Below, piece after piece: positions 9,001 through 45,624 of a stretch of 64,000 bases of DNA. The notes below the pieces were generated by a model. That model was not told where the DNA came from. It made no database searches and saw nothing but the letters and a program-made list of their open reading frames with translations. Positions within the stretch are counted from its first letter, which is position 1; each line of letters starts with the position of its first letter. The translations under genes were made by a program, and so were the position numbers. Origin of the DNA: Amphiscolops sp. MND2022 (taxonomy: Eukaryota); the NCBI GenBank assembly GCA_964187785.1, contig OZ076415.1, forward strand, positions 65,906,001 through 65,970,000, read 5' to 3'.

Positions 9001-12000
9001 GATCATGATTTTCCTCCCCCATTTATGCGGGCGGAAAATAACAATTCATCGCGATCATTCTTCAAATCTACAAAACTTGACAAATTAGTGGAGAAGAAAC
9101 AAGAACCCCGGCACAAAAAGACTGTTTAAAAAAAGAAAAAACTCTCGGTCAAGTGCAAAGAGGAAAATGACTAAAGCCTTCAAATATACCTTTGCGGTTT
9201 GTCACGACAAAAAAAAACACGATAGAGGACATATCATCAAATTGAAACTCAGAGTGAAACTCATACGAACAGCACGAAGATTTCGAAGAAGATACCTAGC
9301 AAAAAACGCAAAAAAGTGTGAGAATGAGATTCGGCAGAGAAGTCAACGAAACCGAGATGGACAAAAAAGACAACGGAGTCACTTCATCGATTGTGGATGT
9401 GACGGCATACATTAAGGAAGCAAAAAGAGCTCAACAAATCCAAAACAATCAAATCATCCATCACGTTCCAAGTGACATAAGGATTACCGAAGAAACGGCT
9501 CTCTTGCTTAGGCGAGGACCATATCGGTACAAACCACTAACAAGTAGAAGTCTGAAGTTTGGAGACCCGGGTTTCCCGACCAGATTGATCATACTCTGAT
9601 AATATATGGTACCATACAACTACAAATTTTTTACTATGATCTTACCATGATCAATCATCTGGAATCATAAATGATTCACAGTTGGTCAACCTGGAACCAT
9701 AAACTTCTATGATCCAGTCTGGAACAATAAATGGTCCTGTCTGGAATCATAAATGGCCCAGAGTATGGACATCCTGGAATCATATATGCCCCAGATTATG
9801 GACATCCTGGAATCATATATGCCCCAGATTATGGACATCCTTGAATCATAAGAGGCCCAGAGTTTGGGAAGCCTGGAATCATCGATACTCATGTCGGACA
9901 TGACAATCACCTGTAAACAAAGTTTGCAGAAATTGATTGCCGTTGTCCTGATACTGTAATTTTAGGGGATATCCCAGCTCGTGGGATACATAGTATCACA
10001 CTTAACGAGACCCACGACGAGAACGTGGCCTCCTTCAGGTCTCAAAAAAAAACAAGACAAGGACATGCCTAATCGAGAAAAAAAATAAAATTGGGTTTCT
10101 CAGTAGAAGGCAGCGGAACTGTGGAGAACCACTGGCATTGACCCATTTTCTTTGATCAAACTTTGATAACACGAAGCACTCGACCTCGAAAAGTACACTC
10201 GAGTAAAGAATAGCTTTTTTCACCAGTAGCTCTGATTCGTTCATTTTTACGAAGGACATAAAAAGTAACTTTATTTATACGGTAAACACAATCTGGCCTA
10301 GCCAGCACGCTGTACTCGAACTGTTGAGTTATAAACGAACTATCTATCTTGCGTTTTCTTAAGGAGGGAGGCGGAAGTTGCATTATATCGAAAATAATGC
10401 GCAATATCAATTTTTTAAAGCAACTATCCTGGCTTTTTCTAATTGGATATCACTCAATTTTCACTAGAAACGAAACGTTCTGCGAACATAGAGGATTTTT
10501 TAAAAAAGTTTCTGGAACTATGCGACTTACTACCGGATAATGTTTTCGAAAAAAAATGCTTAAACCTAGATAACTAAAGAGCTCTCTCAAAAATTTACAA
10601 TGGTAGGTTTTCAATAATTTCTCCAAATTACTCGCCTCTAGATCGTAGATTGATGAGTCTGCGAATCGAAGATCATTCAGTTCGAAATCTGTATCATTGG
10701 GAAAAAATTGTGAAACAAAAGGTGAGTCGCACATTATCATCCCGGGTTTCTCTCACACAAAAACAAGTTGATCATACTTTGGACGATAAAGGTTTATGGT
10801 TCCAGGCTGATCATACTCTGGACCATAAAGGATTATGGTCCCAGGTTGATCATATATGGTCCAGAGTATGGCCAGCCTGGAATCATAAACATCTATGTTG
10901 CACAGTATGAGCAACCTGTTTTGGTGTGGGAGGGAAACCCGGGCACATTAGTGATCGAATCTAAGTCTTGTAGGGGTGCCTCCATGAGCGCGTTGGAAAT
11001 ACTGCCCTCGGGCGGATAAATCTCAAATCCCCAGCAGCGTCGTGACCTGTGCATGAGAGCTTACTGTTAAATGTCAACCGGGGTTCGCCGAAGTTGCTCA
11101 GTCAGTCTGGAAATGAATCTTCGCAATTCCTGACAACAGCATGGACTCCTTAACACTAGCTTCTCAAGACCTTGAATGGGTATCGGCCCTGAACAAGTCA
11201 CCTCGGCTCCCTTTCGGATTGACGACCTCGCACCCAGTGCACCCAGACTATTGAGACAGTCAACTTACTTGTGAACTATACTCAACTTGTAGGGAATTGT
11301 TCTAATTGGACAGGTTGATTTGAAAGGGGAAACCCTTCAAACAAACCTCCTTTACTAACAGATCTTTCTTAGTTTGCCTTGAATAGAGGATGATTATTTG
11401 AAGTGTAAACCATCTTTCTCAGTGACATTCGGATCGATGCCACACGTTCATTGATTTAGAAGCTTCTGGCCAACCATGGGTAGAAAGGACCAAAAATATG
11501 CCCGAAGCTACTTGTAAGATGATGCTTGCCAAATTGGTGTATATGCTGTTCCGATTCGTGGTTAGGTAAGAGGTACTCATCCTTTGGTGAAATGTACTCT
11601 TTCTTTAAACTCTGAGTGATTGACGTTACTTGATTGTTGGCGCCACTTGTCGATATCTCTGATGTCTATGATGTAACCGGCGGTTTAAGGGTGTGATAGG
11701 TGTTCACTGATCTGATGGGCTCTGCAGTGAGACTCAGCAAGGCCAATGGCGATAGGCCCCAGAGACACGCCAAAGAACAATCAAAAAGTCAAGTTGGAAT
11801 TTATACTGTACTTGAAAAGTCTTATCATAAAGAGAGATCTTAAAGACGCAATCGCAACAAATGCGTTCAGATTGATCTTTCAAATAAAAAATAATCCGAT
11901 CTGGGTAATAGTTTATGGACAGAATTGTGGTCTCGAGTGTTTTCAAGGGGGAACACCTAGATAAATACCATTTCGGACACATCGAAGGAAATAAATGATA

Positions 12001-18286: not shown

Positions 18287-18584
18287 GAAGGTTTTTCATT
18301 TTTTTCAAGATTCAATTCTATAAATATTTCTCGCAATTCCTAGACTTGTAATTTTCTGGTAAAAGCCACCCAGTTTGACCTAATTCATGGCATCACTAGC
18401 ACGTGCTGCTTGTTTTGTTTAAACAATCTCTTCACTTACTTTTCTCCATTATATCTTCTGAAACTTTTTTTGGATTTTTTGTGGAGTTTTTGTCTTCCTT
18501 TTCTCTTTCATGCTGCTGAGACACCCCTCTGGATATTTTAGGATACCTAATAAATCCCTGAATAACTAGCACCGCAGTATGGAA

Positions 18585-19315
18585 TGTAACGGCAAGCGCT
18601 AAGCGTTTGGGACGAAACATTGGAGTGGAGGAACTGACACTATGGATATGGTCCGGGACAAACCACCATAGCACCAGCTCACTTTGTCCCCCTGTGGGTA
18701 GCCGGTCCCGAGGAGGGGGAACCGTCTTAAAGGATGCTCTCCGGTCTGATCCAGTCTGTAATTGCTGAGAATAACGGGCATTATGTTTTTTCTCTTCATA
18801 ACCACCGTCTAGACAGCCTTTAAAAACAATGCCAAGGATAAACAGTGTAAATTTCCAATTCCAGAGTGAAATTCCAGGGTGACATGTGAATAAGGTCTAA
18901 AATGGGTACTAAGATCTAAACTGCGAAAACTAGCGCATGGGCTAGCTAAAAACAGTAGAAACACATCAAAATAGGCACGAATATGGCCAACCACACTGCT
19001 ACAAGCACCAAAAAGGATAATTAAGCGAAAAGACGCATTTTTCCGATTCTTGCTACTTTGGGTAGCATAATGCTGAAAATCGGTAAAAACCGGAGTTAGC
19101 ACCTCAAAAAGAGTCTTTTTATGAGTTTTCTGAGCGCATCGGCTTCTACACTCCGTGTTCCCGTTCGGTCGTCTCCGCGGGCGGCTTGCTTCGTCTTCTG
19201 AACTGCTTTTTGACAGGTACTTTGGCCAAAAACATGCTCAATTTGCCACGTCAGATTTGAACGAAATTTTGATCGATTTTTCTGAAAACTCGTTGTACCA
19301 CAGGTTTCCGTTACA
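18585..19315 (-). repeat. Full LTR copy (731 bp) at the 3' side
   Basis: Same termini; differs from the 5' LTR by scattered substitutions and two short indels. Confidence 0.85.
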
Positions 19316-19765
19316 TAAATTTAGAGCATGAAAAAGTCACCGATAAGCTCCAAACGTTTTACTGAAAGTGCTCGGCAATCTATGAAAAGTGGTAAAACTT
19401 CAGCGCACTTCCAACTAAAGATACTCTCTTATCAATTTCTGACTTTTAAAACCTAATTACAACAAACCTGTAAGCTTTCACTCAAGGTGCTTTTGCACGC
19501 TTTTTTGTCCAAAAAATGAAACGGCAGTCATACCTAGCAGTAATCAAGCAAAAAAAGAGAGCCTTTGAATTTTTCACTCATGAAGTCTCATTTTCGGATT
19601 ACCCAATCCACTTATTGAGAATCTTCCTCGCCGTAATCCGTTTCACGTTAATGACAATCAAATAAGTAACAATTTTCAACAAGACGCTCAATTTGCCACG
19701 TCAGATTTGAACGAATTTTTGGTCGATTTTTCTGAAAACTCGTTGTACCACAGGTTTCCGTTACA

Positions 19766-19783
19766 TCCACTCCCCGGGTCTTA
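19766..19783 (-). promoter_or_regulatory. Polypurine tract ...GACCCGGGGAGTGGA directly before TGTAACGG
   Basis: Abuts a third, 78-bp truncated LTR start (19688-19765). Confidence 0.7.
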
Positions 19784-20873
19784 TGCATGACGTCCCTGTC
19801 ATGCGGAGAGGCTGGAAACGTCTCCACATCATTGCAATCCACAGGGAGTTCAAACTGATGTTTTTGCAAGGGTCCAGTGGCACTGTCATCTTTTTCTGAT
19901 TAGGCAACCTTGAGGTCTTGCTTCTTGGAATCCAGGAACCTGCATTGTCCACAAACTGTTGAAACAGAGCTAGCCCTCGAGTTAGAAAAAAGTACTCAAA
20001 AATGCACCTTGAAATTGATCAAATCCTAAAAAATGCACCAATTTGTTAGCATGGGTTTTTTGCACCAAAACTGACTGGGATCTTTCTAGCACAACGGTTG
20101 TTTGGACGTCTAAAAGTTCTTTTACGGAGCTCTCAAGCTCCAAAACGCACGTGGTTTTCATCAAAAATGTTTTGTCCACGGCACTAAAAACCCAGTTTGC
20201 AGAAAGTTAAAAGATAGTCTCGATAAAACTTCTTTTCAGCGGAAAAACCACTGTTTAAAAGGAAAACAAGCTGTATTTTAAACACTTTTTGTTCACAGTT
20301 TCGTTTGGTTTGGGCAACACGCACTGATGTGAAGCTCCATACCTGCATAGAGGTCAGTAGCATCGGTTAAGCTGCGTATAGGAAGCAAACTACGTACTGC
20401 TCGTAAGTGTAAGCACTGGAATGAAGTACGCCAGAATAGACAAAATCCAACAATTTAGACATCTGGAGCGCGCGAGCTCCACAACTTTCGAGTGTCACGT
20501 TGAAATTTGGAGGAAAAATTGAAAACTTTGGGAAAATTTACGCAAAAAACACAAATAGCACCTTTTGGGCGAAGCAATACATGTTGAGTTTTTAGAGTTT
20601 CTGGGTTACTCATTGAAATAACAGAAGTATTTGAATTCAAACATCTCAAATAAAACTAAAAACAAAAGTGTCGCGACGTACGTTTACATGACTACTAAAA
20701 TAACGAAATAAAGTTACAGAAATAACTGCTCCAATTAGAACATCACGCTGCAAGGTGTTCGTTACCAAACGTAGTGATATCCTCCGTGCGTTGTCCAATC
20801 CAATTGAGTTGAGGAGTGTAGTCGTGTTTTTCCTCAACTGAGGCTCCCCGGGCCTTAGTTGACTCCCCGGGTC

Positions 20874-22184
20874 TTAGTCGTTGAGCACCCTCCTTGATAT
20901 GAGGAGAGGAATTAGATAAAAATAATGTCCAATACCCAAAATGCAGAACGATAAATTGGGTCTTGAACACGATCTTGGATAGATATTCGACGGGCGGCCA
21001 CGCATAAGTCCCTCCGGTCGGTGTGACCATGACAGTAGAAGGGTTTCCGCAGCTGAGCATGGTGGACGACCACGACGACGTCCGTCATAAAAAGATAGGA
21101 GCACTTTTTGCCATGAGTGCTCACAAGGAGTGCGCGGTGGTCGACCACGCCTATGTCCAGCTGGTCGTGTTTTAGCTGAACCACCAGGCAAGCCTCTGAC
21201 GAAGATTGGTGAGTTTGCCAAAATAATATTCTGCAGACCATGTTTGGCAGAACGTGGCACAAAAGATTCTTTCAACAAATCTGGCAGCAACTTCGAAATT
21301 GATAATGGGGACTTTGTTCCAGGGAAGTGAGAGTTGCAAACCGAATCCATTGGAGTTGTCGATAGGTGATTTTGAAGAAGGTTTGGTGTCGGTGCGGTTT
21401 CAGCTTCCAACACAGCATTGGCAGATAGAATCTTCGTTCCGCAATTTGTTGCAGAGCAATAATTTGGAGTTGAGGGTACCCTCTCCGTTTTCAATGATGA
21501 AATGGAGGGTAAGGTTGTTATCAGTTCCTCTTCCGTATCACTTGTGCAGGGATTGCCCTCGAGCAATCCATAATCAGCAAGGTGATAAATGGGTACCGTA
21601 TCAGCAATGCCCATGGTTGTAGTGTCCAAAAACATTGGGTCCATATCTTTTGTAGGCGGTGTCATTGGTTCTACTTCGGAGTCGTTTGGAATATTGATAG
21701 TTGCACTTTCGAAGTGTACTGCTACACTTAACGACTGCAATTGCGCTAGCGCTCGAGCTAGCAATTTTTCTCTGCGTAGATCGCTTTGTGCCAAAAAGAC
21801 TGATATTTCATCCATCTGCTGCTCCAGGGTCTCTACCTTTTGGTTCAGTGTCTGATAAGTCTGAATACTGGTTTCATGGAGAGAGCATAGTCTCGATGAC
21901 GATACTGAACTAAGACTGGAAGCCCTTATAATCCTCCCTGGCTCGGTAACGCGCGAGTTGCCAGCCATTGAGTCTAGAAAGTTAGCTACAAAATTGAACC
22001 TGTTCTCCAAATTCCAGTCTTCGACGTTCAGATCATCCAATTTCGTTGATCGGTCATGTTCATCTGCCATTTGCGATTCACTTTCTGCTTTCAAGACGGG
22101 TTCAGCGATTAGTTGTGCTGCACTGACACCCTCTCCCCCCTTGAAAAAGGAAAGGAGGCGGTGTAGGACCTTAAACAAAGTCAT
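20874..22184 (-). CDS. Orphan intronless ORF (436 aa from the first ATG; 443 aa from TTG 22205): predicted coiled coil, Ser/Thr/Pro-rich linker, three RGRP repeats, hydrophobic C-terminus
   Basis: 1.3 kb open in an otherwise decayed element. QTLNQKVETLEQQMDEI is heptad-like; repeats HRRGRPP, RRRGRPP, LMRGRPS; tail LSFCILGIGHYFYLIPLLI. No family recognised. Confidence 0.6.
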   Translation of the reverse strand: MTLFKVLHRLLSFFKGGEGVSAAQLIAEPVLKAESESQMADEHDRSTKLDDLNVEDWNLENRFNFVANFLDSMAGNSRVTEPGRIIRASSLSSVSSSRLCSLHETSIQTYQTLNQKVETLEQQMDEISVFLAQSDLRREKLLARALAQLQSLSVAVHFESATINIPNDSEVEPMTPPTKDMDPMFLDTTTMGIADTVPIYHLADYGLLEGNPCTSDTEEELITTLPSISSLKTERVPSTPNYCSATNCGTKILSANAVLEAETAPTPNLLQNHLSTTPMDSVCNSHFPGTKSPLSISKLLPDLLKESFVPRSAKHGLQNIILANSPIFVRGLPGGSAKTRPAGHRRGRPPRTPCEHSWQKVLLSFYDGRRRGRPPCSAAETLLLSWSHRPEGLMRGRPSNIYPRSCSRPNLSFCILGIGHYFYLIPLLISRRVLND

Positions 22185-25100
22185 TTCAGCGTCAGATAGG
22201 TTCAAACTGCTTGACTAGAACTCTTTTTGTACCCAAAATTAGTCTCAGGGTCAAAGTCAAGATGAGCTCCTGTGGTCACAGCGTGCTGAAAAAAGCTTCA
22301 GGTCTTTCACGCAATGCGTTGAGCTGGAAAATTGTGCGCTGGGGCACAAGGATGCGGTAGTGTCGGATAGTGTACTCGAAACAAACAGTCGAGCTGTCTA
22401 TTGACCTCTCAACCTAAAGGAGTTTGGGTGTGTTGCAATTACCCAAAAGTGTTTTCTGCAGAAGTGACATGTTATTCGGTGTTTGTTTTACCTGGCATAG
22501 CAGAAAAACACACGTCGTTTAAGTTGGACGAATGACCTGCCAAAGCTGATAAACACCTCCAGCAACAAGCTAGAGACTTTTTCACCAATTTTTTGAAATT
22601 TTCAAATTTTTTGAAAATTACTCAAGTGGCTCGTACAAAGTGTGGGAACGTAGGATCGTGCTCAAAATCAGCCACTCGGTCCCTCGTCTAGCCAGGCGCA
22701 CTGCAGTAAGCACCAATGGGGTCTCAGGCTATTGGATGAGTTTCCGATACGGTACAAGTGTTCCGTATAGACGAGTCTCAACTGATACGATTTTTCAATG
22801 TGCAATCAATGACTGTCGTCCACGATGCTGAGCTCTCAAGCTCACTTTTACAGAGACGTTGCATCCAATGACACTGACAACAATGGTCCACAGCAAAGTG
22901 GTCCCAACTTTCCGATGAGGTGCTCCGATAACTCTCAAAATTGGTCCAATTTGTCACAATACACAGGATATCACCACTGTAAGAAACGAAATGCTGTCTC
23001 AGCAAAGCAGCACAGTCGATACTGGCCACAAATAGCACGTACAGCAATATGAATTCACGACCAAGAGTTGTGACAAGGGGGTTTTCCGCAGGTTTCTAAC
23101 GTATAGCTGGGTTTAACCCCACTTTTCCAATTTTCGTCTCGGTGAAACCTTAAGTCCAAATCACGATATGCACGTCTCAAGTTGGTCAAAATCACTTCTA
23201 TGGGTCGGAGCGGCCTCAAATTTACTCAGGCAGTTGTTACCAACCCACAAGCCCAGAAAATGAGTTTGGTTCAGAGTTACACGTTCTCTGAGACAAGCAC
23301 GAGATGTTTACAACAAATTTTGAACTTTCTCGGAGATAACAAAAAAAACACAAGTTGCTCGGATTCGTCACTCGACAGTCGGATCTGGCTCAAAGTTGAC
23401 CAGGGGACCCTACAGACACGTAGGTACACGATAGTGAACGCCGATTTGGGTTCCGTGACTTGTACACACTTTCCCCTGGGCACAGACGTTGCGATACTCC
23501 TGTGTATCAGTAGGGGTCAAAATGCACACTAATCACACAATTTCTGAGCACTGGTTGTAGTCAGCGGTCTGGTTTTTCCGCTAGCGGTGTGCCAACTAGT
23601 ATCGGTTGCGTTGGTCAGCAATAAACTGTTCTCACTCTCCGGCTAAGGTATCCGGGTCTTTCCCAAAAAAAATTGAAAAAACGGCCATTTTGTACCTGTT
23701 TTTATGCAGTACGTTTCCGTCAATTTCTCAACGAATACTGCACTGATCGGCACGAAACCTAATACACGTTCCCAGTGGGCACCCACAATGCTGGTATTAC
23801 AGCTCAATGGAAACTTTCGAGTTTACCGGGAACTTGGGCTAGGCGTGGACACGATCTTAGAAAAAACGGTCTTTTTTGACACTTTTTTCACAAATCGGCT
23901 AAGAGGGTCGACACTACAAATGTTACGGCAGGGTCAGTAGGGTTAACGCGTTGCCCCACTGGTCACAGTACTGCCACAAGCCCTCAATTAGCCGTGCCTG
24001 TTAGGTATGAGGCACTGTCGGTCCTACAGTTTTGGAAAAATTCGGCTGTCATAGCTCGTTCTGATGTCGAAACGTCAGAGAGCTTTTCTCAACTTTGGTT
24101 AGCGCTAAGTCCACCAAATTTTCGGTGCGAGCGTTTATTTTGATGGTAATTGCAAAAATGCAACCACTTTTTGGCTAGGGTTCGGGGATCTATGACCCGA
24201 CCCTAACAATTGGACAGTCCGATTTTGTGGAAATTTGATCAAATTCAGTGCGTTTTTCCCTTTTGCTCAACACTGAATGGGAGTTTTGCTCGCAATTTTC
24301 ACTAAAATGCGTTATTTTTATTATAAAAACAGAAAATTAGAGCGCTTGGGCTCCCAGGTTACGAAAACACAGAGTGCCCTATAGGTTTTAATTTTGCACT
24401 CTGACACTCATGAAACTGGCCAAAAATCAAGGTTTTTCGACTGGTGATCACTAAGAAAACGTTACAAACTCTTCTAAATCCTATTTTCGGTACTGTGAAG
24501 TGTGTCCCAAACTAATAGCAGCAAGGAAGAGGCAATTACATTACTATCTGGCACTCTCCCAGTAGCATTTCATGGTGGTTTTTTGCCAATTTCGCCAAAA
24601 ACCGGGTTTTTTTTACAAAATGCGTCCCAAAAAGGACTCCAATGGTCTTCTGGTGAACATTACATTATGTAGCAGTACCCTAGAGGTTTCGAGCTGCTTT
24701 CCATCCATTTTTGCAACTTCTGTGGTAAAAATCTAGAGCGCATGGGCTCGTACCTAGAAAAACATTCAAAAGTGTCAAAATTGACGTTTTTGCTACTTTT
24801 GCACCAAAAATCGGACTTTTCTCACTGAAAACGGTTGCAAGAGCACACACTAAATTGCAACAGGGTACAACTAGCATGAACAAACGATTCCCCATCAAAA
24901 ATTACACAATCGAAAAAATTTTTCATACCATACTCCAAAAATTTGATTCTTCCGGAAAGAGGGGTGGTACCTTCGTTGTCCTTTTTCTCAACATCCAGAC
25001 CAGCTAGAGAGAAACGATTTGAACCGTCGGCAACGTCAACACTGGTTCTACTTTTCCATCAAATCCCATCTTTCAATGACGTCTGTAGCAGAAATGGGAA

Positions 25101-25513
25101 AGGAGAGTCGGGAACACTCGTTTCAGCTCATCTATCAGTCAGATGGAATATGGCGCATCCATCAACTGAATACCTCGTACATAGCCAAAAACGCTGAAAT
25201 GAGCTGTAAAACACCTGTTACGACATGCATAACGGCTTTCTAGTGGTTCCCTAAGCCATTACAAAGGTACCCGCTGATGGGAACGTGCAATTTTAGACGA
25301 TACCTGTCAATAAATACCTGTTATCGAAACATACCATAGGTATTCGGAAAAATCCCGTGAAAGATTAGAAAAATACCAAAATATAACATCATATCATTTA
25401 AAAAACATGGAAAAACTCTGGGTAAACGTCTCCTTCCAGAGCCAAATCGTTCTTGGCGTCAAACACCAGAGGGCCGGAAATTTTAATAACCATGAAGGAA
25501 AGCTTCCAAAAGA

Positions 25514-25533
25514 CGATCCCCCTGTGGTCGCCA
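25514..25533 (-). promoter_or_regulatory. Primer-binding site TGGCGACCACAGGGGGATCG (probably tRNA-Arg type)
   Basis: Plus strand reads CGATCCCCCTGTGGTCGCCA, i.e. a tRNA T-arm/acceptor/CCA end, 15 nt from the LTR end. The Arg assignment is inferred from a GACCAC acceptor stem and G discriminator. Confidence 0.8.
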
Positions 25534-25548
25534 AAAAATGAAGTTCCA

Positions 25549-26287
25549 TGTAACGGCAAGCGCTAAGCGTTTGGGACGAAACATTGGAGTGGAGAAACTG
25601 ACACTATGGATATGGTCCGGGACAAACCACCATAGCACCAGCTCACTTTGTCCTCCTGTGGGTAGCCGGTCCCGAGGAGGGGGAACCGTCTTAAAGGATG
25701 CTCTCCGGCCTGATCCAGTCTGTAATTGCTTAGAATAACGGGCATTATGTTTTTTCTCTTCATAACCACCGTCTAGACAGCTTTTAAAAACAATACAAAG
25801 GATAAACAGTGTAAATTCCCAATTCCAGAGTGAAATTCCAGGGTGACATGTGAATAAGGTCTAAAATGGGTACTAAGATCTAAACTGCGAAAACTAGCGC
25901 ATGGGCTAGCTAAAAACAGTAGAAACACATCAAAATAGGCACGAATATGGCCAACCACACAGCTACAAGCTGGGGCGCAAGGACTCCAAGCACCAAAAAA
26001 GGATAATTAAGCGAAAAGACGCATTTTTCCGGTTCTTGCTACTTTGGGTAGCATAATGCTGAAAATCGGTAAAAACCGGAGTTAGCACCTCAAAAAGAGT
26101 CTATTTATGAGTTTTCTGAGCGCATCGTTTTCCCGTTCGGTCGTCTCCGCGGGCGGCTTGCTTCGTCTTCTGAACTGCTTTTTGACAGGTACTTTGGCCA
26201 AAAACATGCTCAATTTGCCACGTCAGATTTGAACGAAATTTTGGTCGATTTTTCTGAAAACTCGTTGTTCCACAGGTTTCCGTTACA
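25549..26287 (-). repeat. 5' LTR (739 bp)
   Basis: TGTAACGG at 25549 and CCGTTACA ending 26287; highly similar to 18585-19315. Confidence 0.85.
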
Positions 26288-26647
26288 TAAATTTAGAGCA
26301 TGAAAAAGTCACCGATAAGCTCCAAACGTTTTACTGAAAGTGCTCGGCAATCTATGAAAAGTGGTAAAACTTCAGCGCACTTCCAACTAAGGATACTCTC
26401 TTGTCAATTTCTGACTTTTAAAACCTAATTACAACAAACCTGTAAGCTTTCACTCAAGGTGCTTTTGCACGCTTTTTTGTCCGAAAAATGAAACGGCAGT
26501 CATACCTAGCAGTAATCAAGCAAAAAAAGAGCCTTTGAATTTTTCACTCATGAAGTCTCATTTTCGGATTACCCAATCCACTTATTGAGAATCTTCCTCG
26601 CCGTAATCCGTTTCACGTTAATGACAATCAAATAAGTAACAATTTTC

Positions 26648-26950
26648 AACAAGACGCCCGCTAAGCACCGGGATATTTTCCCCAACTTAGTTGACTATTT
26701 TAGTTACTAGAAACTAAATGCGTCACTATGAGGAATTTACTAGAGTGAGCATACGTCACTATGCGGGAATGAGACTCTGAGCATACGTCACTATGCGGAT
26801 TTCACTGGAGCGAGTATGCGCCAGCATTATTCAAGTAACTAAAATAGTCAAGTAGTGGATGGAGATCGCGGAGCTTTGGCAGAATATGGAAAAAAACGCA
26901 ACACAGATTATGCTTCCACTCCGCCGTTATATGTGGGCGGAAAATAATAA
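26648..26950 (-). mobile_element. HINE-like short element, copy 2
   Basis: Same termini as copy 1 (AACAAGACGCCCGCTAAGCACCGGGATATTTTCC ... GGGCGGAAAATAA). Confidence 0.6.
26691..26851. mobile_element. 161-bp MITE-like insert with perfect 18-bp TIRs inside HINE-like copy 2
   Basis: TTGACTATTTTAGTTACT (26691-26708) / AGTAACTAAAATAGTCAA (26834-26851); internal GCATACGTCACTATGCGG repeats. Confidence 0.75.
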
Positions 26951-27166
26951 ACCAACTCAGCATGTATCCGATTAGTAGGGTTTTTAAAAGAAAACTTTCA
27001 ACTTTCAGCTTTCAACTATGATTGTTTTTAAAAATTCTCGGAAAAATGTTCACGTTCAGAAGTGAAAGATTAATATTTCATCCCACACATTGATAATTTG
27101 AAGCAACGCCATTGTTAAATTCTTCTTAAGGTTCTTGAAATGGTACAAAGCACACCAAAACGGAAA

Positions 27167-27413
27167 AACAAGACGCCCCCTAAAAACCGGAAAATTTTCC
27201 GCCAAAAATTGTAACGCGTCGGCACGTATTAAAGCTCACAAGCTCCTGTCTGCCAAGCAGACGCACTACCAATAGCGCTATGAAGACTACAATACGAAAT
27301 GGATTAATAACTAAATTGAGTAATAAAGTGGAGGTTCAGCTAAATTTGGGAAAAAAAAACGGAACAAAGATTATAATTTTTCTCCTCCATTAAATGTGGG
27401 CGGAAAATAACAA
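27167..27413 (-). mobile_element. HINE-like short element, copy 3, with a full-length tRNA-like segment
   Basis: Termini AACAAGACGCCCCCTAAAAACCGGAAAATTTTCCGCC ... GGGCGGAAAATAACAA; minus-strand TAGCGCTATTGGTAG (A-box-like) and a decayed T-arm at ~27210-27285. Confidence 0.55.
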
Positions 27414-27619
27414 TTGAGAATGACAGGATATAAACTCGATGAATTATTGAAATGACCTTAGATTGGTTGAATGGGAAAAATTGTAGTCTAGACTTGCATT
27501 TCAGGTATATATGCTAAATACTGCACGACATTCATAATCCTGGTTATCAAGTTACTGATAATAGAGACAATGAAGAGTCACAATGACGTAATCTTGATCT
27601 AATAGATATTAAGAGCTTG

Positions 27620-29846: not shown

Positions 29847-32800
29847 TTCCGCTGTTTCGAACTACAATAGTGATATTTCTAAAAGCAACAAAAGGCAAAT
29901 CTCAAAATCGAATATCTCTAAAACAGTAGCATTTGAGAAATAATAAAAGTGAAAGTTACTTAGATTTTTATCTAGTTTACAAATATCTTTATTTGAAAGT
30001 TATGCGATGACAATTGTAGAAGTTAGGATAACCCATTTTTAACCAAATTTAGGTCAAAATTGAGATTTTTCCCACTTTTAGTCAACTTTTGCTTGATATT
30101 TTAGAGAAATGATATGTGCAATCGACTCCCCTGATTTCACTGAAGCCCTTGATATGTTTTGATTTAGAAATCATCCTAAAATGGAAAAAAAGCTGTAAAA
30201 TTAGGCTTTTCAAAAATACATGTATCAAGATATGATTTTGAACTTTATCAACTTAACACAAGCTCATACTAATACAATTTAGAAAATTTTCGAGAAAAAA
30301 ATAAATATATTCAGATTCGGAATGTTTAGGAAAACTTTTCGGTCAAAATTAATTTGAAATCAAAATATTGTAATTCGGTCAGATATTCGAAAAACTACAA
30401 AATGATGTTTTGGAAATCGCTCTCGACCAATGAAATGAGCGCGTGAGACCTTGATCAGCCAATGATATTTGTTTATTTGCTTTCTTTTCGCGTGCTATGT
30501 TTCTTCTTCTAGAATCACTACTGTACATGTTTGTTTTACGTTGGCTCTTCTAAATTTGCTAGGGACCACACTTAGTCAGGAGTTCCAGGAATGTATTTGA
30601 TATATAATGAACAAGACGAATAAAAAATTCGCACAGTGCCGAAAAATCCAAAGGGGGACCCTTTAGGCACATCCGGTTTTGTAAGTTTCCTTGAAAAGTA
30701 AAACATGAAAGGGGGACCCTTTGGACTAAGGTTGCCTTGGCGGGACTTGGCCTTAGGTGGTTTCAGGATTGTTGGGGCCTCGAAAATAACTTGAAATCAG
30801 CTGTTCGAAAAATACCCTAAAAAAGCCTAATTGGTGGCTGTAAAAGATTGAGTTTTGGGAATCACACTCTAGGATGGTCGGCGACCGACATATTTTTGGC
30901 CAATTAATCCATCTAGGGTAAAAAACCGGAAATCGAAGGCAAAAATTTGAAAAATATTTTTTTCCTGGGACAAAATCAGACTTTTCTTCTAATATAGTAC
31001 AAATTTGGTAATTTATCGTCCTGCTTGTGTATTTAACTTGTCAAGTGGTCATATTTGGTTATATCTAGTCCAGGCGGAAGCCGGTAGAGGTTTTGTAACC
31101 TGATAGAAACTTTGTGGGCAAATAACAAATTTAATCATGAACCACAAAACCTTGTAGATGTATGCTTCAGATGTTGATATACCAATATCTTTATATACTT
31201 TATCGACTCGAAAGTGGGCAGTTTGTTAACTTTATGTATCATTATAGAACCTTTATGGTGCCCTCATATTTGATTGTAAACATGGCAGTTTATGTAATTT
31301 CCTGTATTGATACCAACCCAAGTTAACTCCTTCTTGAAAGAGAGACCCAAAAAGTGAGATTGAAAACGGTTGATATTCCTTGTTCAAGCAACCAAGAAAG
31401 TAATTGTTCGGAACTTTATCAATTGAGTATTCAAGTTAAATTGGGCTATTATAGAGCTATTTCGAAATTGTTCTTGTTTTGATACTGGATTCGAGATTCC
31501 AACAATATATTATTATTGCATTTCGCTCGAAAAGGTTTTGAGACAGAAGACTTTCAATCTTTTGGCAAAGTTATTCGACTACAATTTGTTACTCCCCAAT
31601 TTCATCAACCAGTCAACGGTTTAGTGAGTTTTATGAGAAAACTCTTCAAGTCAGTAAATTCTATGTTTTCAAAACAAGTCGAAAAGTGGTCACAGATGCA
31701 GTAATTGCTTCACCGACCATCGGAAACTTGTTTAAACAATAGGTATTGTCCAGAACTTGAAAAGATGGGACATTTTGAAGTTATTGAAAGTAGTGGATTT
31801 TGCAAGTGCCTTTCTCGCAGAAACAGTTCTTAGACTTTCGAACTACAATAGTAGTTCCGCTATTTCGAACTACAATAGTGATATTTCTAAAAGCAACAAA
31901 AGGCAAATCTCAAAATCGAATATCTCTAAAACAGTAGCATTTGAGAAATAATAAAAGTGAAAGTTAATTAGATTTTTATCTAGTTTACAAATATCTTTAT
32001 TTGAAAGTTATGCGATGACAATTGTAGAAGTTAGAATAACCCATTTTTAACCAAATTTAGGTCAAAATTGAGATTTTTCCCACTTTTAGTCAACTTTTGC
32101 TTGATATTTTAGAGAAATGTTATGTGCAATTGACTCCCCTGATTTCACTGAAGCCCTTGATATGTTTTGATTTAAAAATCATCCTAAAATGGTAAAAAAA
32201 GCTGTAAAATTAGGCTTTTCAAAAATACATGTATCAAGATATGATTTTGAACTTTATCAACTTAACACAAGCTCATACTAATACAATTTAGAAAATTTTC
32301 GAGAAAAAAATAAATATATTCAGATTCGGAATGTTTAGGAAAACTTTTCGGTCAAAATTAATTTGAAATCAAAATATTGTAATTTGGTCAGATATTCGAA
32401 AAACTACAAAATGATGTTTTGGAAATCGCTCTTGACCAATGAAATGAGCGCGTGAGACCTTGATCAGCCAATGATATTTGTTTATTTGCTTTCTTTTCGC
32501 GTGCTATGTTTCTTCTTCTAGAATCACTACTGTACATGTTTGTTTTACGTTGGCTCTTCTAAATTTGCTAGGGACCACACTTAGTCAGGAGTTCCAGGAA
32601 TGTATTTGATATATAATGAACAGGACGAATAAAAAATTCGCACAGTGCCGAAAAACCCAAAGGGGGACCCTTTAGGCACATCCGGTTTTGTAAGTTTCCC
32701 TGAAAAGTAAAACAAGAAAGGGAGACCCTTTGGACTAAGGTTGCCTTGGCGGGACTTGGCCTTAGGTGGTTTCAGGATTGTTGGCGCCTCGAAAATATCT

Positions 32801-33843
32801 TGAAATCAGCTGTTCGAAAAATACCCTAAAATAGCCCAAATGGTGGCTGTAAAAGATTGAGTTTTGGGAATCACACTCAAGGATGGTCGGCGACCGACAT
32901 ATTTTTGGTCAATTAAACCATCTAGGGTAAAAAACCGGAAATCGAAGGCAAAAATTTGAAAAATATTTTTTTCTGGGGCAAAATCAGACTTTTCTTCTAA
33001 TATAGTACAAATTTGGTAATTTATCGTCCTGCTTGTGTATTTAACTTGTCAAGTGGTCATATTTGGTTATATCTAGTCCAGGCGGAAGCCGGTAGAGCTT
33101 TTGTAACCTGATAGAAGCTTTGTGGGCAAATAACAAATTTAATCATGAACCACAAAACCTTGTAGATGTATGCTTCAGATGTTGATATACCAATATCTTT
33201 ATATACTTTATCGACTCGAAAGTGGGCAGTTTGTTAACTTTATGTATCATTATAGAACTTTTACGGTGCCCTCATATTTGATTGTAAACATGGCAGTTTA
33301 TGTAATTTTCTGTTTTGATACCAACCCAAGTTAACTCCTTCTTGAAAGAGAGACCCAAAAAGTGAGATTGAAAACGGTTGATATTCCTTGTTCAAGCAAC
33401 CAAGAAAGTAATTGTTCGGAACTTTATAGTTTGAGTATTCAAGTTAAATTGGGCTATTATAGAGCTATTTCGAAATTGTTCTTGTTTTGATACTGGATTC
33501 GAGATTCCAACAATATATTATTATTGCATTTCGCTCGAAAAGGTTTTGAGACAGAAGACTTTCAATCTTTTGGCAAAGTTATTCGACTACGATTTGTTAC
33601 TCCCCAATTTCATCGACGAGTCAACGGTTTGGTGAGTTTTATGAGAAAACTCTTCAAGTCAGTAAATTCTATGTTTTCAAAACAAGTCGAAAAGTGGTCA
33701 CAGATGCAGTAATTGCTTCACCGACCATCGGAAACTTGTTTAAACAATAGGTATTGTCCAGAACTTGAAAAGAAGGGACATTTTGAAGTTATTGAAAGTA
33801 GTGGATTTTGCAAGTGTTTTTCTCGCAGAAACAGTTCTTAGAC
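29847..33843 (+). repeat. Tandem duplication, period 2008 bp (upstream flank + BEL LTR)
   Basis: Units 29847-31835 and 31855-33843; paired ORFs 31516/33524 are offset by 2008; the units differ by scattered SNPs. Confidence 0.95.
30770..31835 (+). repeat. 3'-truncated copy of the BEL LTR
   Basis: Starts TGTTGGGGCC after the same flank as 32779 and stops at CTTAGAC before the filler. Confidence 0.9.
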
Positions 33844-33921
33844 GTGCCCGCAAGTTGTCAACCAGGCCGTCGTAAAGCTTGGTAAGTTATTTTGTTATCA
33901 TACCTTGCAGACGTAAAATTT

Positions 33922-33939
33922 TGGTGCCGCGACCCGGGA
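33922..33939 (+). promoter_or_regulatory. BEL PBS TGGTGCCGCGACCCGGGA (tRNA-Phe/His-type)
   Basis: 18-nt complement of a tRNA 3' end; identical copy at 44915-44932. Confidence 0.85.
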
Positions 33940-36569
33940 AAAGGCACTGTGCGGGATTCAGTCATTATTTGATTTTCAAAAGAAAATAAAATGGCAGAGC
34001 CGATTGTACGCAATTTGTGGGACCCCACATATATGACTTCAACAAAAAACGGACATGAAAGAAAGGTCTTTTTTACTGACTGCTTGAAAAATTCTTCGAC
34101 AATGAAGGAGTGAGTAGAACACGAAAAACGCGTCTCAGATCTGATTTTAATTCTCAGAAACCTAGACGCGGATTTCCATGCTCAGGATCCAACTGTTTGG
34201 GTTGACGTTGGTAAGTTCTTAACTTACTCAACTTCAAAGGAGAACTTGCGCAAAGAGTTCGAAATGTATCTCCCCATGCTGAAAGATAAGTTTCAAGGCA
34301 GCCGTAAGGAGATCTTGTTCAAATTGGAGTACGAACTTGAAAATTGTTTTGAAAATTGGAGCAAAAAGTCCTCATTTCTTGTGAGCGTGAGTAGGCTTCC
34401 ATCGCGCCTGAAAAATGAAAATGACCTAATGAAGTATATGAAACTCTGCGATCAGTTTTATGACGCTAAACGAATAATTAAAGCAGAAAAAATGACAATC
34501 AATAAACTGATCGAGCAAGGAGCGAGGTCGAGTCATGTGAGAACTGGCTATCCAGAAACTTCAAGAGTACAAAGCGATTTTAGATAAACGTCACGGACGC
34601 AGACGCAATCTTCTCAAACCTGATTCTTTGACCACTTTATCAAACGCCGAAAAAATTGTCACAGAAATGAATTCTATTGTTCAACAGGCAATGACTGACG
34701 CTCTGAACTATATTGATAGCTGAAATACAGCGGCAAACGATCCATTGGAAAACATAGAAACACCTGAAGTGTCTGGTTTTGAAAGTTCGGAGTTATCAAA
34801 AGACGATGAGAACCGTTCTCATGCGTTGGAAAAATCCAAGGCGAATGAAACACTTGACAAAGGATTGAAACTGCTTAAAAAGGCAAATCAATCAACATTA
34901 TTCCTCAAAATTAACGACCGGTTTGATAACCCAACTTTTCAACCTCAATCAGCTACTCCAGGTTCACAAAATGATTTTCTTTAGTAGACTACTCCCCTAC
35001 AAGAACATTAGCTAAGAGTGAGCCAGCAAAAAAAGCCGGTTCAAAAGTAGGATCCAATGTTTCGAAAATGAGTGAACGAAGACGATTGGAGATACAAGCT
35101 GAACTGATAGATCAAAAATCACAAATGGAAATTGAAAAAAAGGGAATATGATTTGAAACTGGAGACAATACGTCGGGAAATGGAAATGGAGAAGAGGCTC
35201 CAAGAGTTGCAGGCAGAATCGGAAAATGCTGATTTGAAACGTAAGAAGGCTTTTGAAAGGCAGCAAATGCGAATGCAAATAGATGAGGCTGAAGGATCAA
35301 TTCGAGCACCTTCAATATGTCCTAGTCGATGTCTCTTATCCTTGAAGAGGATAAAAACAGCGATATCAAAAGTTGGTTAGAACAAGGCGTTGAAGACTTA
35401 GATAAGTGCTTCTCGCAGCCGAAAGAACCTAGCAGAGAAGTAGAAAATAAAGGTGAGACAAGTAAACCGTCTCAGAAGTTCCAAACATTCGCTCACTAAA
35501 ACCTACTATCGCGACCTCAAGATCGAGGTACGAGTAAGTCACCACAGAGAAAAACCACTGGAATTACGTTCCCGAAAACAAACGCTTTGCTCCAGCAAGG
35601 CAATGAGAACCCGAAGCCTAAATATGACTTCGCGAAACCCTCATTCAAAATAGAAAGTGGTATTCCTTCCTTCACACCAGCAGTTCCTGTACAGCAACCT
35701 GTACATTTTGTTCAAACAAGCTTACTTAAATTGAAATTATCTGAAATTCATGGGGACCCATTGGAATGGCCAGAATGGTCCAGCTTGTTCACAGCCACCA
35801 TCCATAATGCGCCAATTGATGACAATGCAAAAATGAGTTATTTGAAAACACTCGTTAAAGGCAAGGCCAAGTCGGCTATTGCGGGTCTCGGATACTCAGG
35901 AGTCATGTATAGTGCAGCGTGGAATGCTTTGGTTACTAATTTCGGACGGCCACGAACCATTGTCAATGCTCAGATGAAGCAAATTCATTTGTGTCCTTTC
36001 ATCAAGTCGCATGATTCAGCAGCTATTATAAAGTACGCACAGTTGATTACTACATGCGTTAAGGTGTTGAAACAGTTCGGGTTCACTGGAGATTTGTATT
36101 CCGAGTCCGTCTTGAATTCAGCGTTGAGGAGGTTACCACCTGAATTGAAAACCAAGTGGTTTTTTCTTGCGAAGAGCAAAGGCTACTACCACGCTGATCT
36201 TTGCAAATTTAGCGAATGGCTGAACGAAGTTGCTTAAGTTCATGATGAAATGACAGTGCAATTCAACGAGAAAGTGAAATCCTCAACATTTGCTGCTAAT
36301 GAGCAGAACAAATTATTACCTGCATCAACAAAGCAATGTCCATTGAAGGATGGCGACCATAAAATCTGGATGTGTAAGAAGTTCAAACAACAAGGTGTTA
36401 ATGAGAGATACGAAACAATTAAGAAATTTAAACTTCGTTTCTGTTGTTTACACTCACATTTGATGAAGGATTGCAAGTCGGACAGAGTTTGTGGAGTAAA
36501 TGGATGCACCAAGAAACATAACAAGCTTTTGCACTCGGACACTCCTAAAACTGAAAAAGACAAGAAATC

Positions 36570-42500: not shown

Positions 42501-43179
42501 GCAAAGGTGGAGACTTTTTATTTTCTCTTTTTTTGATGAATGCGGTATGATTCGAATAAGAGGTCGCAGCAAACATGCGAATTTGAGCTTCCAACAGCGA
42601 CATCCAATTCTTTTATCCACAAAACACGACATGGTTAGTGTAATGTTACGTGATTTACATCTGGAACACAACCATGAAGGAGTAGAGTATGTTAGAAGCG
42701 TAATACAACAGAAGTTTTGGATTTTGGGATTACGAAATGCTTTGAGGAGCATTAATAGCAATTGTGTTTACTGTCGCAAATTACGTGCGCAGATAAAATC
42801 TCCTCTCATGGCCGATTTACTTGCCGAGAGGCTCGATTATCAGTCATACCCTTTTACCCACGTTGGAATGGATTAATTCGGTCCATTCGAAGTTAAAATG
42901 TTACGAAGATCCATGAAACGATGGTGCTGTTTGTTTACTTGTTTAACTACCAGAGCAGTGCATATCGAAGTGGTTCGAAGCTTTGACACCGATTCCTGTT
43001 TGGTAGCTATCAACAGATTTATCGCCAGACGTGGCAAGCCAACAACCATCAAAAGTGATAATGGTACTAACTTTGTTGGATCCGCGAGAGAGTTAAAAGA
43101 GTACATCAACTCGTGGAATCAGAATCAAATTACATCAGAATTGGCTCAAAAGCATATCGCATGGAAATTTAACCCTCCT
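36570..43179 (+). repeat. Internal 3.3-kb tandem duplication of protease-RT-RH-partial integrase
   Basis: Copies 36570-39883 and 39887-43179; offset 3317, becoming 3296 after a 21-nt deletion in copy 2. Both copies share the same disabling lesions. Confidence 0.95.
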
Positions 43180-45424: not shown

Positions 45425-45624
45425 NNNNNNNNNNNNNNNNNNNNNNNNNNNNNNNNNNNNNNNNNNNNNNNNNNNNNNNNNNNNNNNNNNNNNNNNNNNN
45501 NNNNNNNNNNNNNNNNNNNNNNNNNNNNNNNNNNNNNNNNNNNNNNNNNNNNNNNNNNNNNNNNNNNNNNNNNNNNNNNNNNNNNNNNNNNNNNNNNNNN
45601 NNNNNNNNNNNNNNNNNNNNNNNN
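45425..45624. other. Assembly gap (200 N)
   Basis: Run of N; the true size is unknown. Confidence 1.

What the first reader, a model, noticed from the sequence alone, without database searches (positions are those of the whole stretch)
18585..26287. RT-less LTR element with complete cis signals carrying an intact orphan gene
Seen: LTRs with 8-bp inverted ends (TGTAACGG/CCGTTACA), a 20-nt tRNA-complementary PBS and a PPT abutting an LTR start. The ~5.7-kb interior has no recognisable RT, only possible decayed gag/protease/integrase scraps (e.g. LGREFILL...IDC near 23040), yet keeps a 1.3-kb open frame just upstream of the 3' end, where env/ORF3-type genes sit. Known: non-autonomous LTR families (LARD/TRIM-like) are mobilised in trans. 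Inference: very similar LTRs with a destroyed pol imply mobilisation after decay, so this may be a cargo-carrying parasite or vehicle family whose payload protein is under selection.
Basis: partly seen in the sequence, partly recalled or inferred. Interest (0 to 1): 0.82.

Follow-up and report, generated by a model that had tools for sequence, protein, structure and literature searches.

The report
Non-autonomous Gypsy-type retrotransposon with Gag-derived ORF
This is one older copy of an abundant reverse-transcriptase-less LTR retrotransposon family in an unidentified animal genome; it shares its ends and untranslated parts with full-length Ty3/Gypsy-type elements nearby in the genome, and its single open frame is partly derived from their Gag protein, so it is a well-documented example of a known kind rather than a new kind.

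Summary
There is an LTR element here, on the minus strand, and it has no RT. In this copy the repeat is 1.1 kb: both LTRs carry about 450 extra bp, and the 5' LTR has lost its outermost 79 bp. No gag, protease or integrase scraps are detectable.

The 436-aa ORF belongs to a family of at least 316 related proteins. Every relative I traced lies in one ENA assembly, which also holds the window's own locus. Five more LTR-flanked non-autonomous copies (7.8-8.8 kb) each carry the same single ORF.

Autonomous partners exist. Five Ty3/Gypsy-type elements (14-18+ kb, PR-RT-RNaseH-IN) have the same LTR ends, the same 20-nt PBS-like block and PPT, and a related leader; four also share the 3' UTR. TSDs are 3 bp.

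The ORF is not an orphan cargo. Its first ~235 residues match an N-terminal Gag extension in two partner lineages, and it sits at the gag position. Only the basic, AT-hook-like part is unique. dN/dS between copies is 0.43-0.57, so selection is weak but real. The window's copy versus its 98% twin gives about 0.95, which is neutral.

The parts
18582..18584 (-). Flanking trinucleotide (TTC on the minus strand) next to the 3' LTR. It would be one half of a 3-bp target-site duplication; the other half is lost with the truncated 5' LTR.
   Evidence: Read. Five of six complete relatives have perfect 3-bp duplications.
18585..19765 (-). 3' LTR, 1181 bp. It has three sections: the canonical family LTR (18585-19315), 360 bp unique to this copy (19316-19676), and an outer 90-bp copy of the LTR start (19677-19765).
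   Evidence: LTR positions 452-1182 match the whole L003 LTR at 89%; positions 2-90 match its first 89 bp.
19766..19775 (-). Polypurine tract abutting the 3' LTR.
   Evidence: The same GGGGAGTRR run stands before the 3' LTR in L002, L003, L004, L005, L126, L129 and L130.
19776..20873 (-). 3' untranslated interior, shared with the autonomous partners.
   Evidence: Window 20593-19744 matches L129 at 79% and L131 at 78%.
20874..22184 (-). Intact ORF of 436 aa plus stop. It contains a Gag-N-terminal-extension homologue (about aa 1-235), a predicted long helix (about aa 96-159), three RGRP (AT-hook-like) motifs (about aa 340-400), and a variable tail read from 3' UTR sequence.
22185..25513 (-). 3.3-kb leader with no conserved ORF, shared with the autonomous partners.
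   Evidence: 73-84% identity to L127, L128, L129 and L131. No Pfam hit. No positionally conserved second ORF.
25514..25533 (-). PBS-like 20-mer starting TGG. It has one mismatch to the family form.
   Evidence: The family form is exact in seven instances across L001-L005, L128 and L130. It has one mismatch in the window, L126, L129, L131 and the first L127 copy.
25534..25548 (-). 15-nt spacer between the LTR end and the PBS-like block. It is semi-conserved across copies.
25549..26657 (-). 5' LTR, 1109 bp, lacking its outermost 79 bp. A different repeat starts at about 26648.
   Evidence: The same truncation is present in the 98% twin locus L001.

Best explanation
The region 18585-26657 (minus strand) is an older copy of a non-autonomous LTR retrotransposon family. 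It is slightly damaged at its 5' end. The family derives from, and depends on, Ty3/Gypsy-type autonomous elements of the same animal genome.

Shown: the family keeps the partner's LTRs, the spacer plus PBS-like block, the long leader, the PPT and the 3' UTR. It lacks capsid, protease, RT, RNase H and integrase.

Inferred: its RNA is copied and integrated by partner proteins. The shared leader, the shared 3-bp target duplications and an apparent recombinant between the two classes (L127) point that way.

Shown: in place of gag-pol the family carries one ORF. Its N-terminal half is the N-terminal extension of Gag found in some partner lineages, and includes a predicted coiled-coil helix. Its C-terminal part is a unique basic segment with three RGRP motifs. 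It ends in a tail that runs into 3' UTR sequence.

Shown: the ORF has evolved under weak purifying selection along the family's lineages, but drifts neutrally at this locus.

Inferred, with modest confidence (about 0.35): the protein serves the element itself. It may act as a minimal Gag-like adaptor, in which the coiled coil allows multimerisation or co-assembly with partner Gag and the basic tail binds nucleic acid, favouring its own RNA.
For: - Structure.
- No pol.
- Family size: at least 316 homologues in the word-indexed search, 57 of the best 120 at 420 aa or longer; 198 clusters in the 1.84-billion representative library, all 529 aa or shorter.
- Independent complete copies: L002, L003, L004, L005 and L126. 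LTR-pair K2P is 0.0026-0.045 for the four measured; L126's pair is 94.7% identical.
- Partners: L129 is complete at 14.3 kb, with an LTR pair 98.7% identical and TSD TTC. It is 97% identical to non-autonomous L005 in LTR, 91-97% in leader and 96% in 3' UTR. Its proteins show PR, RT, RNase H and integrase domains. L127, L128, L130 and L131 carry the same LTR ends and PBS-like block.
- ORF origin.
- Selection: dN/dS 0.43-0.57 with bootstrap intervals below 1 for deep pairs; the same alignments read in shifted frames give 0.66-1.06. The window versus L001 gives 0.95.
- Protein shape: mean pLDDT 43; the best-supported element is a long helix at residues 96-159.
Against: - No tRNA matching the PBS-like block was found, and the block sits 15 nt from the LTR end. 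That spacing does not fit the textbook strong-stop scheme.
- No TATA or AATAAA/ATTAAA motif occurs in any of six LTRs in the sense orientation.
- There are no expression data.
- Copies were found through their long ORFs, so the share of intact ORFs is biased upward.
- dN/dS near 0.5 is only moderate constraint.
- The AT-hook reading rests on the motif alone (Pfam AT_hook E=1.8, below threshold).
- L127 could be a rearrangement rather than a recombinant made during copying.
Confidence: 0.85

Rival explanations
1. The ORF does nothing. It is a leftover fusion of Gag N-terminus, junk and UTR that stays open only because the copies are young and because I found them through their long ORFs.
For: - The window's copy versus its twin drifts neutrally (dN/dS 0.95).
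- The tail after the third RGRP motif differs between copies and matches partner 3' UTR.
- The protein is predicted to be almost wholly disordered.
- With about 1.8% LTR divergence, roughly 0.5 stop-creating changes are expected in this copy (my estimate), so its openness alone proves nothing.
Against: - Subfamilies differing by dS 0.3-0.6 still keep the frame, with dN/dS 0.43-0.57 and intervals below 1. The same alignments read in shifted frames give 0.66-1.06.
- 26 columns are invariant, and many more are conserved in at least 90% of the 28 sequences, which share 54-81% identity with the window's protein.
Confidence: 0.15
2. The ORF product works against the partner, or for the host. It would be a truncated Gag that interferes with particle assembly, as truncated Gag proteins do in other systems, so the family persists as a parasite of the partner or as a tolerated restriction factor.
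For: - The N-terminal half is homologous to partner Gag's N-terminal extension, but the capsid and zinc knuckle are missing.
- A coiled-coil-like helix could allow co-assembly.
- Own knowledge: truncated Gag of yeast Ty1 (p22) restricts Ty1.
Against: - There is no sign of host-level constraint at this locus.
- The ORF is always found inside mobile copies, not at a fixed single locus.
- Interference and self-help cannot be told apart from sequence.
Confidence: 0.15
3. The ORF is a captured host gene (true cargo), carried by the element and selected for a host-type function.
For: The AT-hook-like segment (about aa 314-405) has no DNA or protein counterpart in any autonomous element examined.
Against: - A profile search of 1.84 billion representatives found only 198 hits, all 529 aa or shorter, most of them covering only part of the profile. 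The two I traced (P0125, P0190) lie inside retroelements of the same assembly.
- The N-terminal half is partner Gag sequence.
- The ORF ends are anchored in partner UTR sequence.
Confidence: 0.05
4. The structure is not a retrotransposed unit with long LTRs. It is a canonical 0.73-kb-LTR element whose upstream flank (the 360-bp X segment) was copied to both sides by a later segmental rearrangement.
For: - X occurs only beside the two LTRs of this locus, and in no other family member.
- The outer 90-bp piece is closer to L126's LTR start (97.5%) than to this copy's own inner LTR start (94.4%).
Against: - X plus LTR are diverged to the same degree as the canonical LTR parts (one 1.1-kb alignment, K2P 0.018).
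- The PPT abuts the outer 90-bp piece, and homology to other copies' interiors runs right up to it.
Confidence: 0.2

Closest known systems
ETn / MusD pair of mouse (own knowledge, not tested here)
   Same: A non-autonomous family shares LTRs, the primer-binding region and both ends of the interior with an autonomous partner. The middle is replaced by unrelated sequence, and the non-autonomous class is abundant.
   Different: Those are class II endogenous retroviruses of a mammal; here the partner is Ty3/Gypsy-type in an unidentified animal. The ETn replacement is non-coding; here the replacement keeps one selected ORF that is partly Gag-derived.
LARD and TRIM elements of plants
   Same: RT-less LTR elements that depend on proteins supplied by other elements.
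   Different: LARD interiors are long and non-coding, and TRIMs are under about 1 kb. This family is 7.8-8.8 kb with a conserved 430-aa ORF and an identified partner.
Gag-retaining deletion derivatives such as barley BARE2 or mouse IAP I-delta-1 (own knowledge)
   Same: Derivatives of an autonomous LTR element that keep part of gag, lack pol functions and spread using the partner. In I-delta-1 a novel fusion protein favours its own element.
   Different: Here only the N-terminal extension of Gag is kept, with no capsid or zinc knuckle. It is fused to a unique basic segment with RGRP motifs.
CERV accessory protein of C. elegans Cer1 (PMC10309623)
   Same: A lineage-specific protein without known domains, encoded by a Ty3/Gypsy-type element of an invertebrate. 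It acts on the element's genomic RNA.
   Different: CERV is made from a spliced mRNA of an autonomous element. I made no sequence comparison with CERV, so any functional likeness is only a lead.

Membership tests
LTR retrotransposon (structural definition) | Two direct long terminal repeats with TG...CA ends and short terminal inverted repeats | tested here: met
   18585-19765 and 25549-26657, K2P 0.018, TGTAACGG...CCGTTACA. The 5' copy lacks its outer 79 bp.
LTR retrotransposon (structural definition) | Target-site duplication flanking the element | tested here: inconclusive
   Not readable for this copy because the 5' end is truncated. Five of six complete relatives have perfect 3-bp duplications: CTG, AGG, TTC, GAC, TTC. 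Three bp is shorter than the usual 4-6 bp (own knowledge).
LTR retrotransposon (structural definition) | tRNA primer-binding site just downstream of the 5' LTR | tested here: inconclusive
   A 20-mer starting TGG is exact or has one mismatch in every copy examined, but it lies 14-16 nt from the LTR end. No matching tRNA was found: ARAGORN gave 0 genes in nine loci and Rfam 0 hits in the window.
LTR retrotransposon (structural definition) | Polypurine tract abutting the 3' LTR | tested here: met
   19766-19775, conserved in relatives.
Non-autonomous LTR element with an autonomous partner | No RT, RNase H or integrase coding capacity | tested here: met
   Pfam on all interior ORFs of 60 aa or more, both strands, gives nothing. 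tblastn with 11 retroelement ORFs gives nothing below E=0.3.
Non-autonomous LTR element with an autonomous partner | An autonomous element in the same genome shares LTR ends, primer site and untranslated interior | tested here: met
   L129 is complete at 14.3 kb. L127, L128, L130 and L131 are further examples.
Non-autonomous LTR element with an autonomous partner | Actual copying by the partner's proteins | not testable with these tools
   Only indirect signs exist: shared 3-bp duplications, LTR and leader 91-97% identical between the classes, and an apparent recombinant (L127).
Ty3/Gypsy (Metaviridae-type) lineage | pol domain order protease - RT - RNase H - integrase | tested here: met
   Met in the partners, not in the window's element, which has no pol. 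The window's element is assigned to the lineage through nucleotide homology of LTR, leader and 3' UTR.
env / ORF3-type gene | Lies downstream of pol, with signal peptide, transmembrane or fusion features | tested here: not met
   The ORF begins where partner gag begins. No env-type Pfam family is hit. It is predicted to be disordered apart from one long helix. No dedicated signal-peptide or transmembrane prediction was run.
Retrotransposon Gag | Capsid-like domain and usually a CCHC zinc knuckle | tested here: not met
   No Retrotrans_gag, PNMA or zf-CCHC hit in the ORF. Partner Gag proteins do show PNMA-like and zf-CCHC hits. Only the N-terminal extension of Gag is shared.
AT-hook DNA-binding proteins | R-G-R-P core flanked by basic residues, recognised by the Pfam AT_hook model | tested here: inconclusive
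   Three RGRP cores are conserved in the family. Pfam AT_hook scores E=1.8, 9.2 bits against a cut-off of 17.4.

The most novel reading that the evidence does not exclude
The family may have evolved its own 'hitch-hiker' protein: the N-terminal, coiled-coil part of the partner's Gag joined to a new basic nucleic-acid-binding tail. Such a protein could let an RNA with no capsid, RT or integrase genes compete for, or interfere with, the partner's particles. With the 3-bp target duplication and the 15-nt gap between LTR and primer site, the whole clade of autonomous and non-autonomous elements may be a so-far undescribed Ty3/Gypsy-type lineage with unusual end processing.
Probability: 0.25. Interest if true: 0.6.

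Novelty: new variant of a known kind. Interest (0 to 1): 0.36.

Why it matters
Pairs of non-autonomous and autonomous LTR elements are well known. Cases where the dependent member keeps a selected, partly new protein are few, and they bear on how parasites of retroelements arise. Here both members, their shared cis sequences, an apparent recombinant and the mosaic origin of the ORF can all be read from one genome. That makes the question of what a Gag N-terminal domain plus a basic tail does for a pol-less element concretely addressable with expression and distribution data. For genome annotation, the practical point is that this abundant ORF family (hundreds of copies) is transposon-borne, not a host gene family.

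Tried and rejected
- Pfam scans of 20 interior ORFs on both strands gave only sub-threshold noise.
- tblastn with BEL/Pao and Gypsy ORFs against the interior gave nothing below E=0.3.
- A profile search of PDB sequences gave 0 hits.
- The AlphaFold2 model had mean pLDDT 43, so I ran no fold search; matches would be meaningless.
- Rfam at gathering thresholds found nothing in the window. Tandem Repeats Finder found nothing in 18-28 kb.
- I rejected the BEL/Pao element in the same window (about 32.8-45.4 kb) as partner. It has different LTR ends and no copy of the PBS-like block.
ARAGORN found no tRNA gene in nine fetched loci. Literature string searches returned only unrelated PCR-primer papers. 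The tRNA claim stays unverified.
- The origin of the AT-hook-like part was not found. Sub-profile and low-stringency blastn searches against five autonomous elements gave only non-significant or UTR matches. hhalign against the long integrase extension of L127, which has its own RGRP run, gave probability 3.5%.
- No TATA or polyadenylation hexamer was found in six LTRs.
- A literature search for 3-bp target duplications in LTR retrotransposons returned only papers on other transposon types.
- The host species was not identified. The sources give no names, and BEL/Pao content only points to an animal (own knowledge).

2. In the shifted-frame control I joined the aligned codons of the intact ORF across alignment gaps in memory to compute a statistic. 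Nothing was printed or saved.
3. The alignment tool printed a consensus line by itself.

Full report
**1. What is in the sequence**

The window holds one direct repeat pair at 18584-19687 and 25548-26657. The alignment is 1126 columns long and 95.1% identical counting gaps. It contains 19 substitutions in 1088 aligned bases, K2P 0.018.

Both copies start TGTAACGG (18585, 25549).

The last 90 bp of the left copy (19677-19765) duplicate 19227-19316 at 94% identity. The canonical LTR of the closest subfamily (L003, 750 bp) aligns to 18585-19315 over its whole length at 89%.

In this copy, however, both LTRs carry about 450 extra bases on their upstream side: a 90-bp copy of the LTR start plus 360 bp found nowhere else in the data. 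The right-hand copy stops 79 bp short of the outer end, and a different repeat begins at about 26648.

**2. Orientation and cis signals**

All signals read on the minus strand.
- The 5' LTR (26657 to 25549) is followed by a 15-nt spacer and a 20-mer starting TGG (25533 to 25514). The 20-mer occurs once in the window, with 0 expected by chance.
- A purine run (19775 to 19766) abuts the 3' LTR (19765 to 18585).
- The ORF (22184 to 20877) runs the same way.
- There is no TATA or AATAAA/ATTAAA hexamer in this or five related LTRs, so U3, R and U5 cannot be placed by motif.

**3. Interior**

No ORF of 60 aa or more on either strand hits a Pfam family above noise. tblastn with 11 retroelement ORFs (BEL/Pao from the window, Gypsy-type from L004) finds nothing below E=0.3. 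The interior therefore has no detectable pol or gag remnants. The only long frame is the 436-aa ORF (446 aa stop to stop).

**4. The family**
- The ORF has at least 316 homologues in the word-indexed search. All are unnamed ENA proteins. Identity ranges from 97% down to about 40%, and 57 of the best 120 are 420 aa or longer.
- A profile search of 1.84 billion cluster representatives finds 198 hits, none longer than 529 aa.
- All twelve look-ups led to one ENA assembly (ERZ25074608), on contigs at 85-111x coverage.
- That assembly contains the window's own ORF exactly. It also has a second version of the whole locus (L001) that is 98% identical including flanks and has the same 5' truncation.
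- Five independent LTR-flanked copies (7.8-8.8 kb) were recovered: L002, L003, L004, L005 and L126.
- All have TGTAAYG...CRTTACA ends, a 14-16-nt spacer, the same 20-mer (exact or one mismatch), the same purine run before the 3' LTR, and one ORF of 415-449 aa. The window's own copy is 8.1 kb.
- LTR-pair K2P is 0.0026 (L002), 0.0039 (L005), 0.018 (L003) and 0.045 (L004). L126's pair is 94.7% identical.
- Target duplications are 3 bp and perfect in four of these five copies, and also in the autonomous L129, which makes five of six complete elements.

**5. Autonomous partners**

One weak ORF hit (P0125) led to L127, where ORF-like sequence is followed by protease, RT, RNase H and integrase genes. 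Searching with its gag-protease piece gave 210 further proteins and these loci.
- **L129** is a complete 14.3-kb element, with an LTR pair 98.7% identical and TSD TTC. Its coding region is split into four ORFs. Its LTR is 97% identical to that of non-autonomous L005, its leader 91-97%, and its 3' UTR 96%. It has the same spacer, the PBS-like block with one mismatch, and the same PPT.
- **L128, L130 and L131** are further subfamilies with the same LTR ends and PBS-like block. L130's queried protein stands for a cluster of 381 members, and the element is over 18 kb. L131's coding region is broken into many pieces.
- Against L129, the window's element matches in LTR, leader (73-80%) and 3' UTR (79%), but not in its ORF body.
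- Domain order in the partners is the Ty3/Gypsy order. Their Gag shows weak PNMA-like and clear zf-CCHC hits.
- The BEL/Pao element elsewhere in the window is unrelated.

**6. Origin of the ORF**

I searched a profile of 28 family members against plus-strand reading-frame pieces of the autonomous elements, each piece separately.
- L131 and L127 carry profile positions 22-236 and 1-191 plus 221-280 directly in front of, or fused to, gag (E 7.6e-38 and 9e-126).
- Five of the first 267 retrieved family proteins combine ORF-like and gag-start sequence.
- L129 and L128 keep only scraps. L128 has positions 5-39 just upstream of the gag ATG. L129 has positions 263-280, corresponding to the last 50 bp of its leader (96% nt identity with L005), and positions 400-431 in its 3' UTR.
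- ORF residues about 186-223 resemble the first ~35 residues of partner Gag.
- The segment with the three RGRP motifs (about aa 314-405) has no counterpart at protein or DNA level in any autonomous element examined.

The ORF is therefore a mosaic: the N-terminal extension of partner Gag plus its first residues, then a unique basic segment, then a tail read from 3' UTR. It starts where gag starts, after the shared leader. It only looks 3'-proximal because pol is missing.

**7. Selection**
- Pairwise Nei-Gojobori dN/dS between copies is 0.43-0.71.
- For deep pairs (dS 0.46-0.68) it is 0.43-0.57, with bootstrap intervals below 1. Values are similar in the N-terminal part and the AT-hook-like part.
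- The same alignments read in shifted frames give 0.66-1.06.
- Between the window and its 98% twin it is 0.95, with 14 amino-acid differences.
- With about 1.8% LTR divergence, I estimate that an open 436-codon frame in this copy is not improbable by chance.

The signal is weak purifying selection along the lineages that gave rise to copies, with neutral drift after insertion. This is what is usually seen for transposon genes (own knowledge). Because copies were found via long ORFs, the proportion that is intact is biased upward.

**8. The protein**

No Pfam family is hit, and there is no PDB relative by profile. The AlphaFold2 model has mean pLDDT 43. Its best-supported element is one long helix at residues 96-159 (pLDDT 63-78), and most of the rest is predicted disordered. 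The three RGRP cores are conserved. Pfam AT_hook is the only family reported for that segment, and it is far below threshold (E=1.8).

**9. Mechanism**

Shown: the family shares cis sequences with autonomous elements, lacks pol, has many young copies and makes the same unusual 3-bp duplications. An element (L127) joins the non-autonomous 5' part to the autonomous 3' part at a 50-bp stretch the two classes share.

Inferred: the family's RNA is handled by partner proteins.

Inferred with modest confidence: the ORF product helps its own element as a minimal Gag-like adaptor.

Alternatives are no function, interference with the partner, or captured host sequence; they are weighed in the rival explanations.

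**10. Unexplained**
- The 15-nt spacer between the LTR end and the PBS-like block. On the textbook strong-stop scheme (own knowledge) those bases would end up beyond the terminal CA at one end of the copied DNA.
- The 3-bp duplication, shorter than the usual 4-6 bp.
- The origin of the extra 450 bp in this copy's LTRs. Its outer 90 bp are closer to L126's LTR start (97.5%) than to this copy's own inner LTR start (94.4%).
- The tRNA partner of the PBS-like block.

**11. Verdict**

This is a real, well-supported non-autonomous Ty3/Gypsy-type element and family with identified partners. The claims of 'complete signals', 'decayed pol scraps' and 'orphan cargo at the env position' do not. It is a new variant of a known kind, of moderate interest.

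Noticed in passing
window 29847-45424: A BEL/Pao-type element (DUF1759, Peptidase_A17, RVT_1 and rve hits) has long LTR-like repeats (32773-34422 vs 43752-45424, cut by the N run at 45425-45624). A 2-kb block upstream is duplicated in tandem (29847-31835 vs 31855-33843, 98%). A 3.3-kb internal tandem duplication covers part of pol (36570-39883 vs 39887-43179, 99.3%). Its coding region is in several pieces. It is unrelated to the element studied.
   Followed up: partly
window 26648-27415 and 8760-9046: Directly beside the truncated 5' LTR lies another repeat family. It has a 34-bp exact match to 8760-8793, a roughly 20-bp inverted repeat pair around 26680 and 26840, and two ~60-90-bp blocks 463 bp apart (26890-26950 and 27353-27413) that also match 8957-9046. 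It may be a small DNA-transposon-like element whose arrival removed the LTR end.
   Followed up: no
L002, L003, L004, L005, L129 (element ends): Perfect 3-bp target-site duplications occur in five of six complete elements of this clade. A 14-16-nt semi-conserved spacer lies between the LTR end and the PBS-like block in all of them. Both are unusual for LTR retrotransposons.
   Followed up: partly
L004 1274-7769: A 3.25-kb tandem duplication (98.7%) contains an LTR, the PBS-like block and part of the leader, giving an LTR-leader-LTR-leader arrangement upstream of a full copy.
   Followed up: no
L127 4891-21590: This is a composite. A non-autonomous 5' part (LTR, leader, ORF N-terminal part) is joined in frame to an autonomous gag-pol. 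It is followed directly by the LTR end, PBS-like block and leader of another copy, with most of the intervening 3' LTR missing.
   Followed up: partly
L130 15234-21234; L127 14706-18941: The autonomous partners have very long coding sequence after the integrase core, with no Pfam hit. L130 has about 6 kb in five ORFs. L127 has a roughly 900-aa extension that contains its own RGRP run.
   Followed up: partly
window 60081-63978 (minus strand): A run of ORFs (356, 219, 192, 171 and 150 aa) has no Pfam family above threshold; there is only a weak OSK-domain hit (E=0.002). It could be another mobile element or a host gene.
   Followed up: no
3' end of the ORF in all copies (e.g. window about 20900-21270; L002 10815-11417): An overlapping open frame of 113-201 aa in another reading frame accompanies the 3' part of the ORF in every copy. 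In L004 the AT-hook-like part is read in that other frame. This may only reflect low stop-codon density in this segment.
   Followed up: no
L001 vs window; L132: The same ENA assembly holds two versions of the whole locus, 98% identical and on different ~100x contigs. One of them encodes the window's ORF exactly. They could be haplotypes or a recent segmental duplication.
   Followed up: partly
cluster of P0043 (P0392, P0393, P0398, P0399): Several near-identical family members are called as 656-662-aa proteins, because an open frame of about 210 aa runs into the ORF from upstream.
   Followed up: partly
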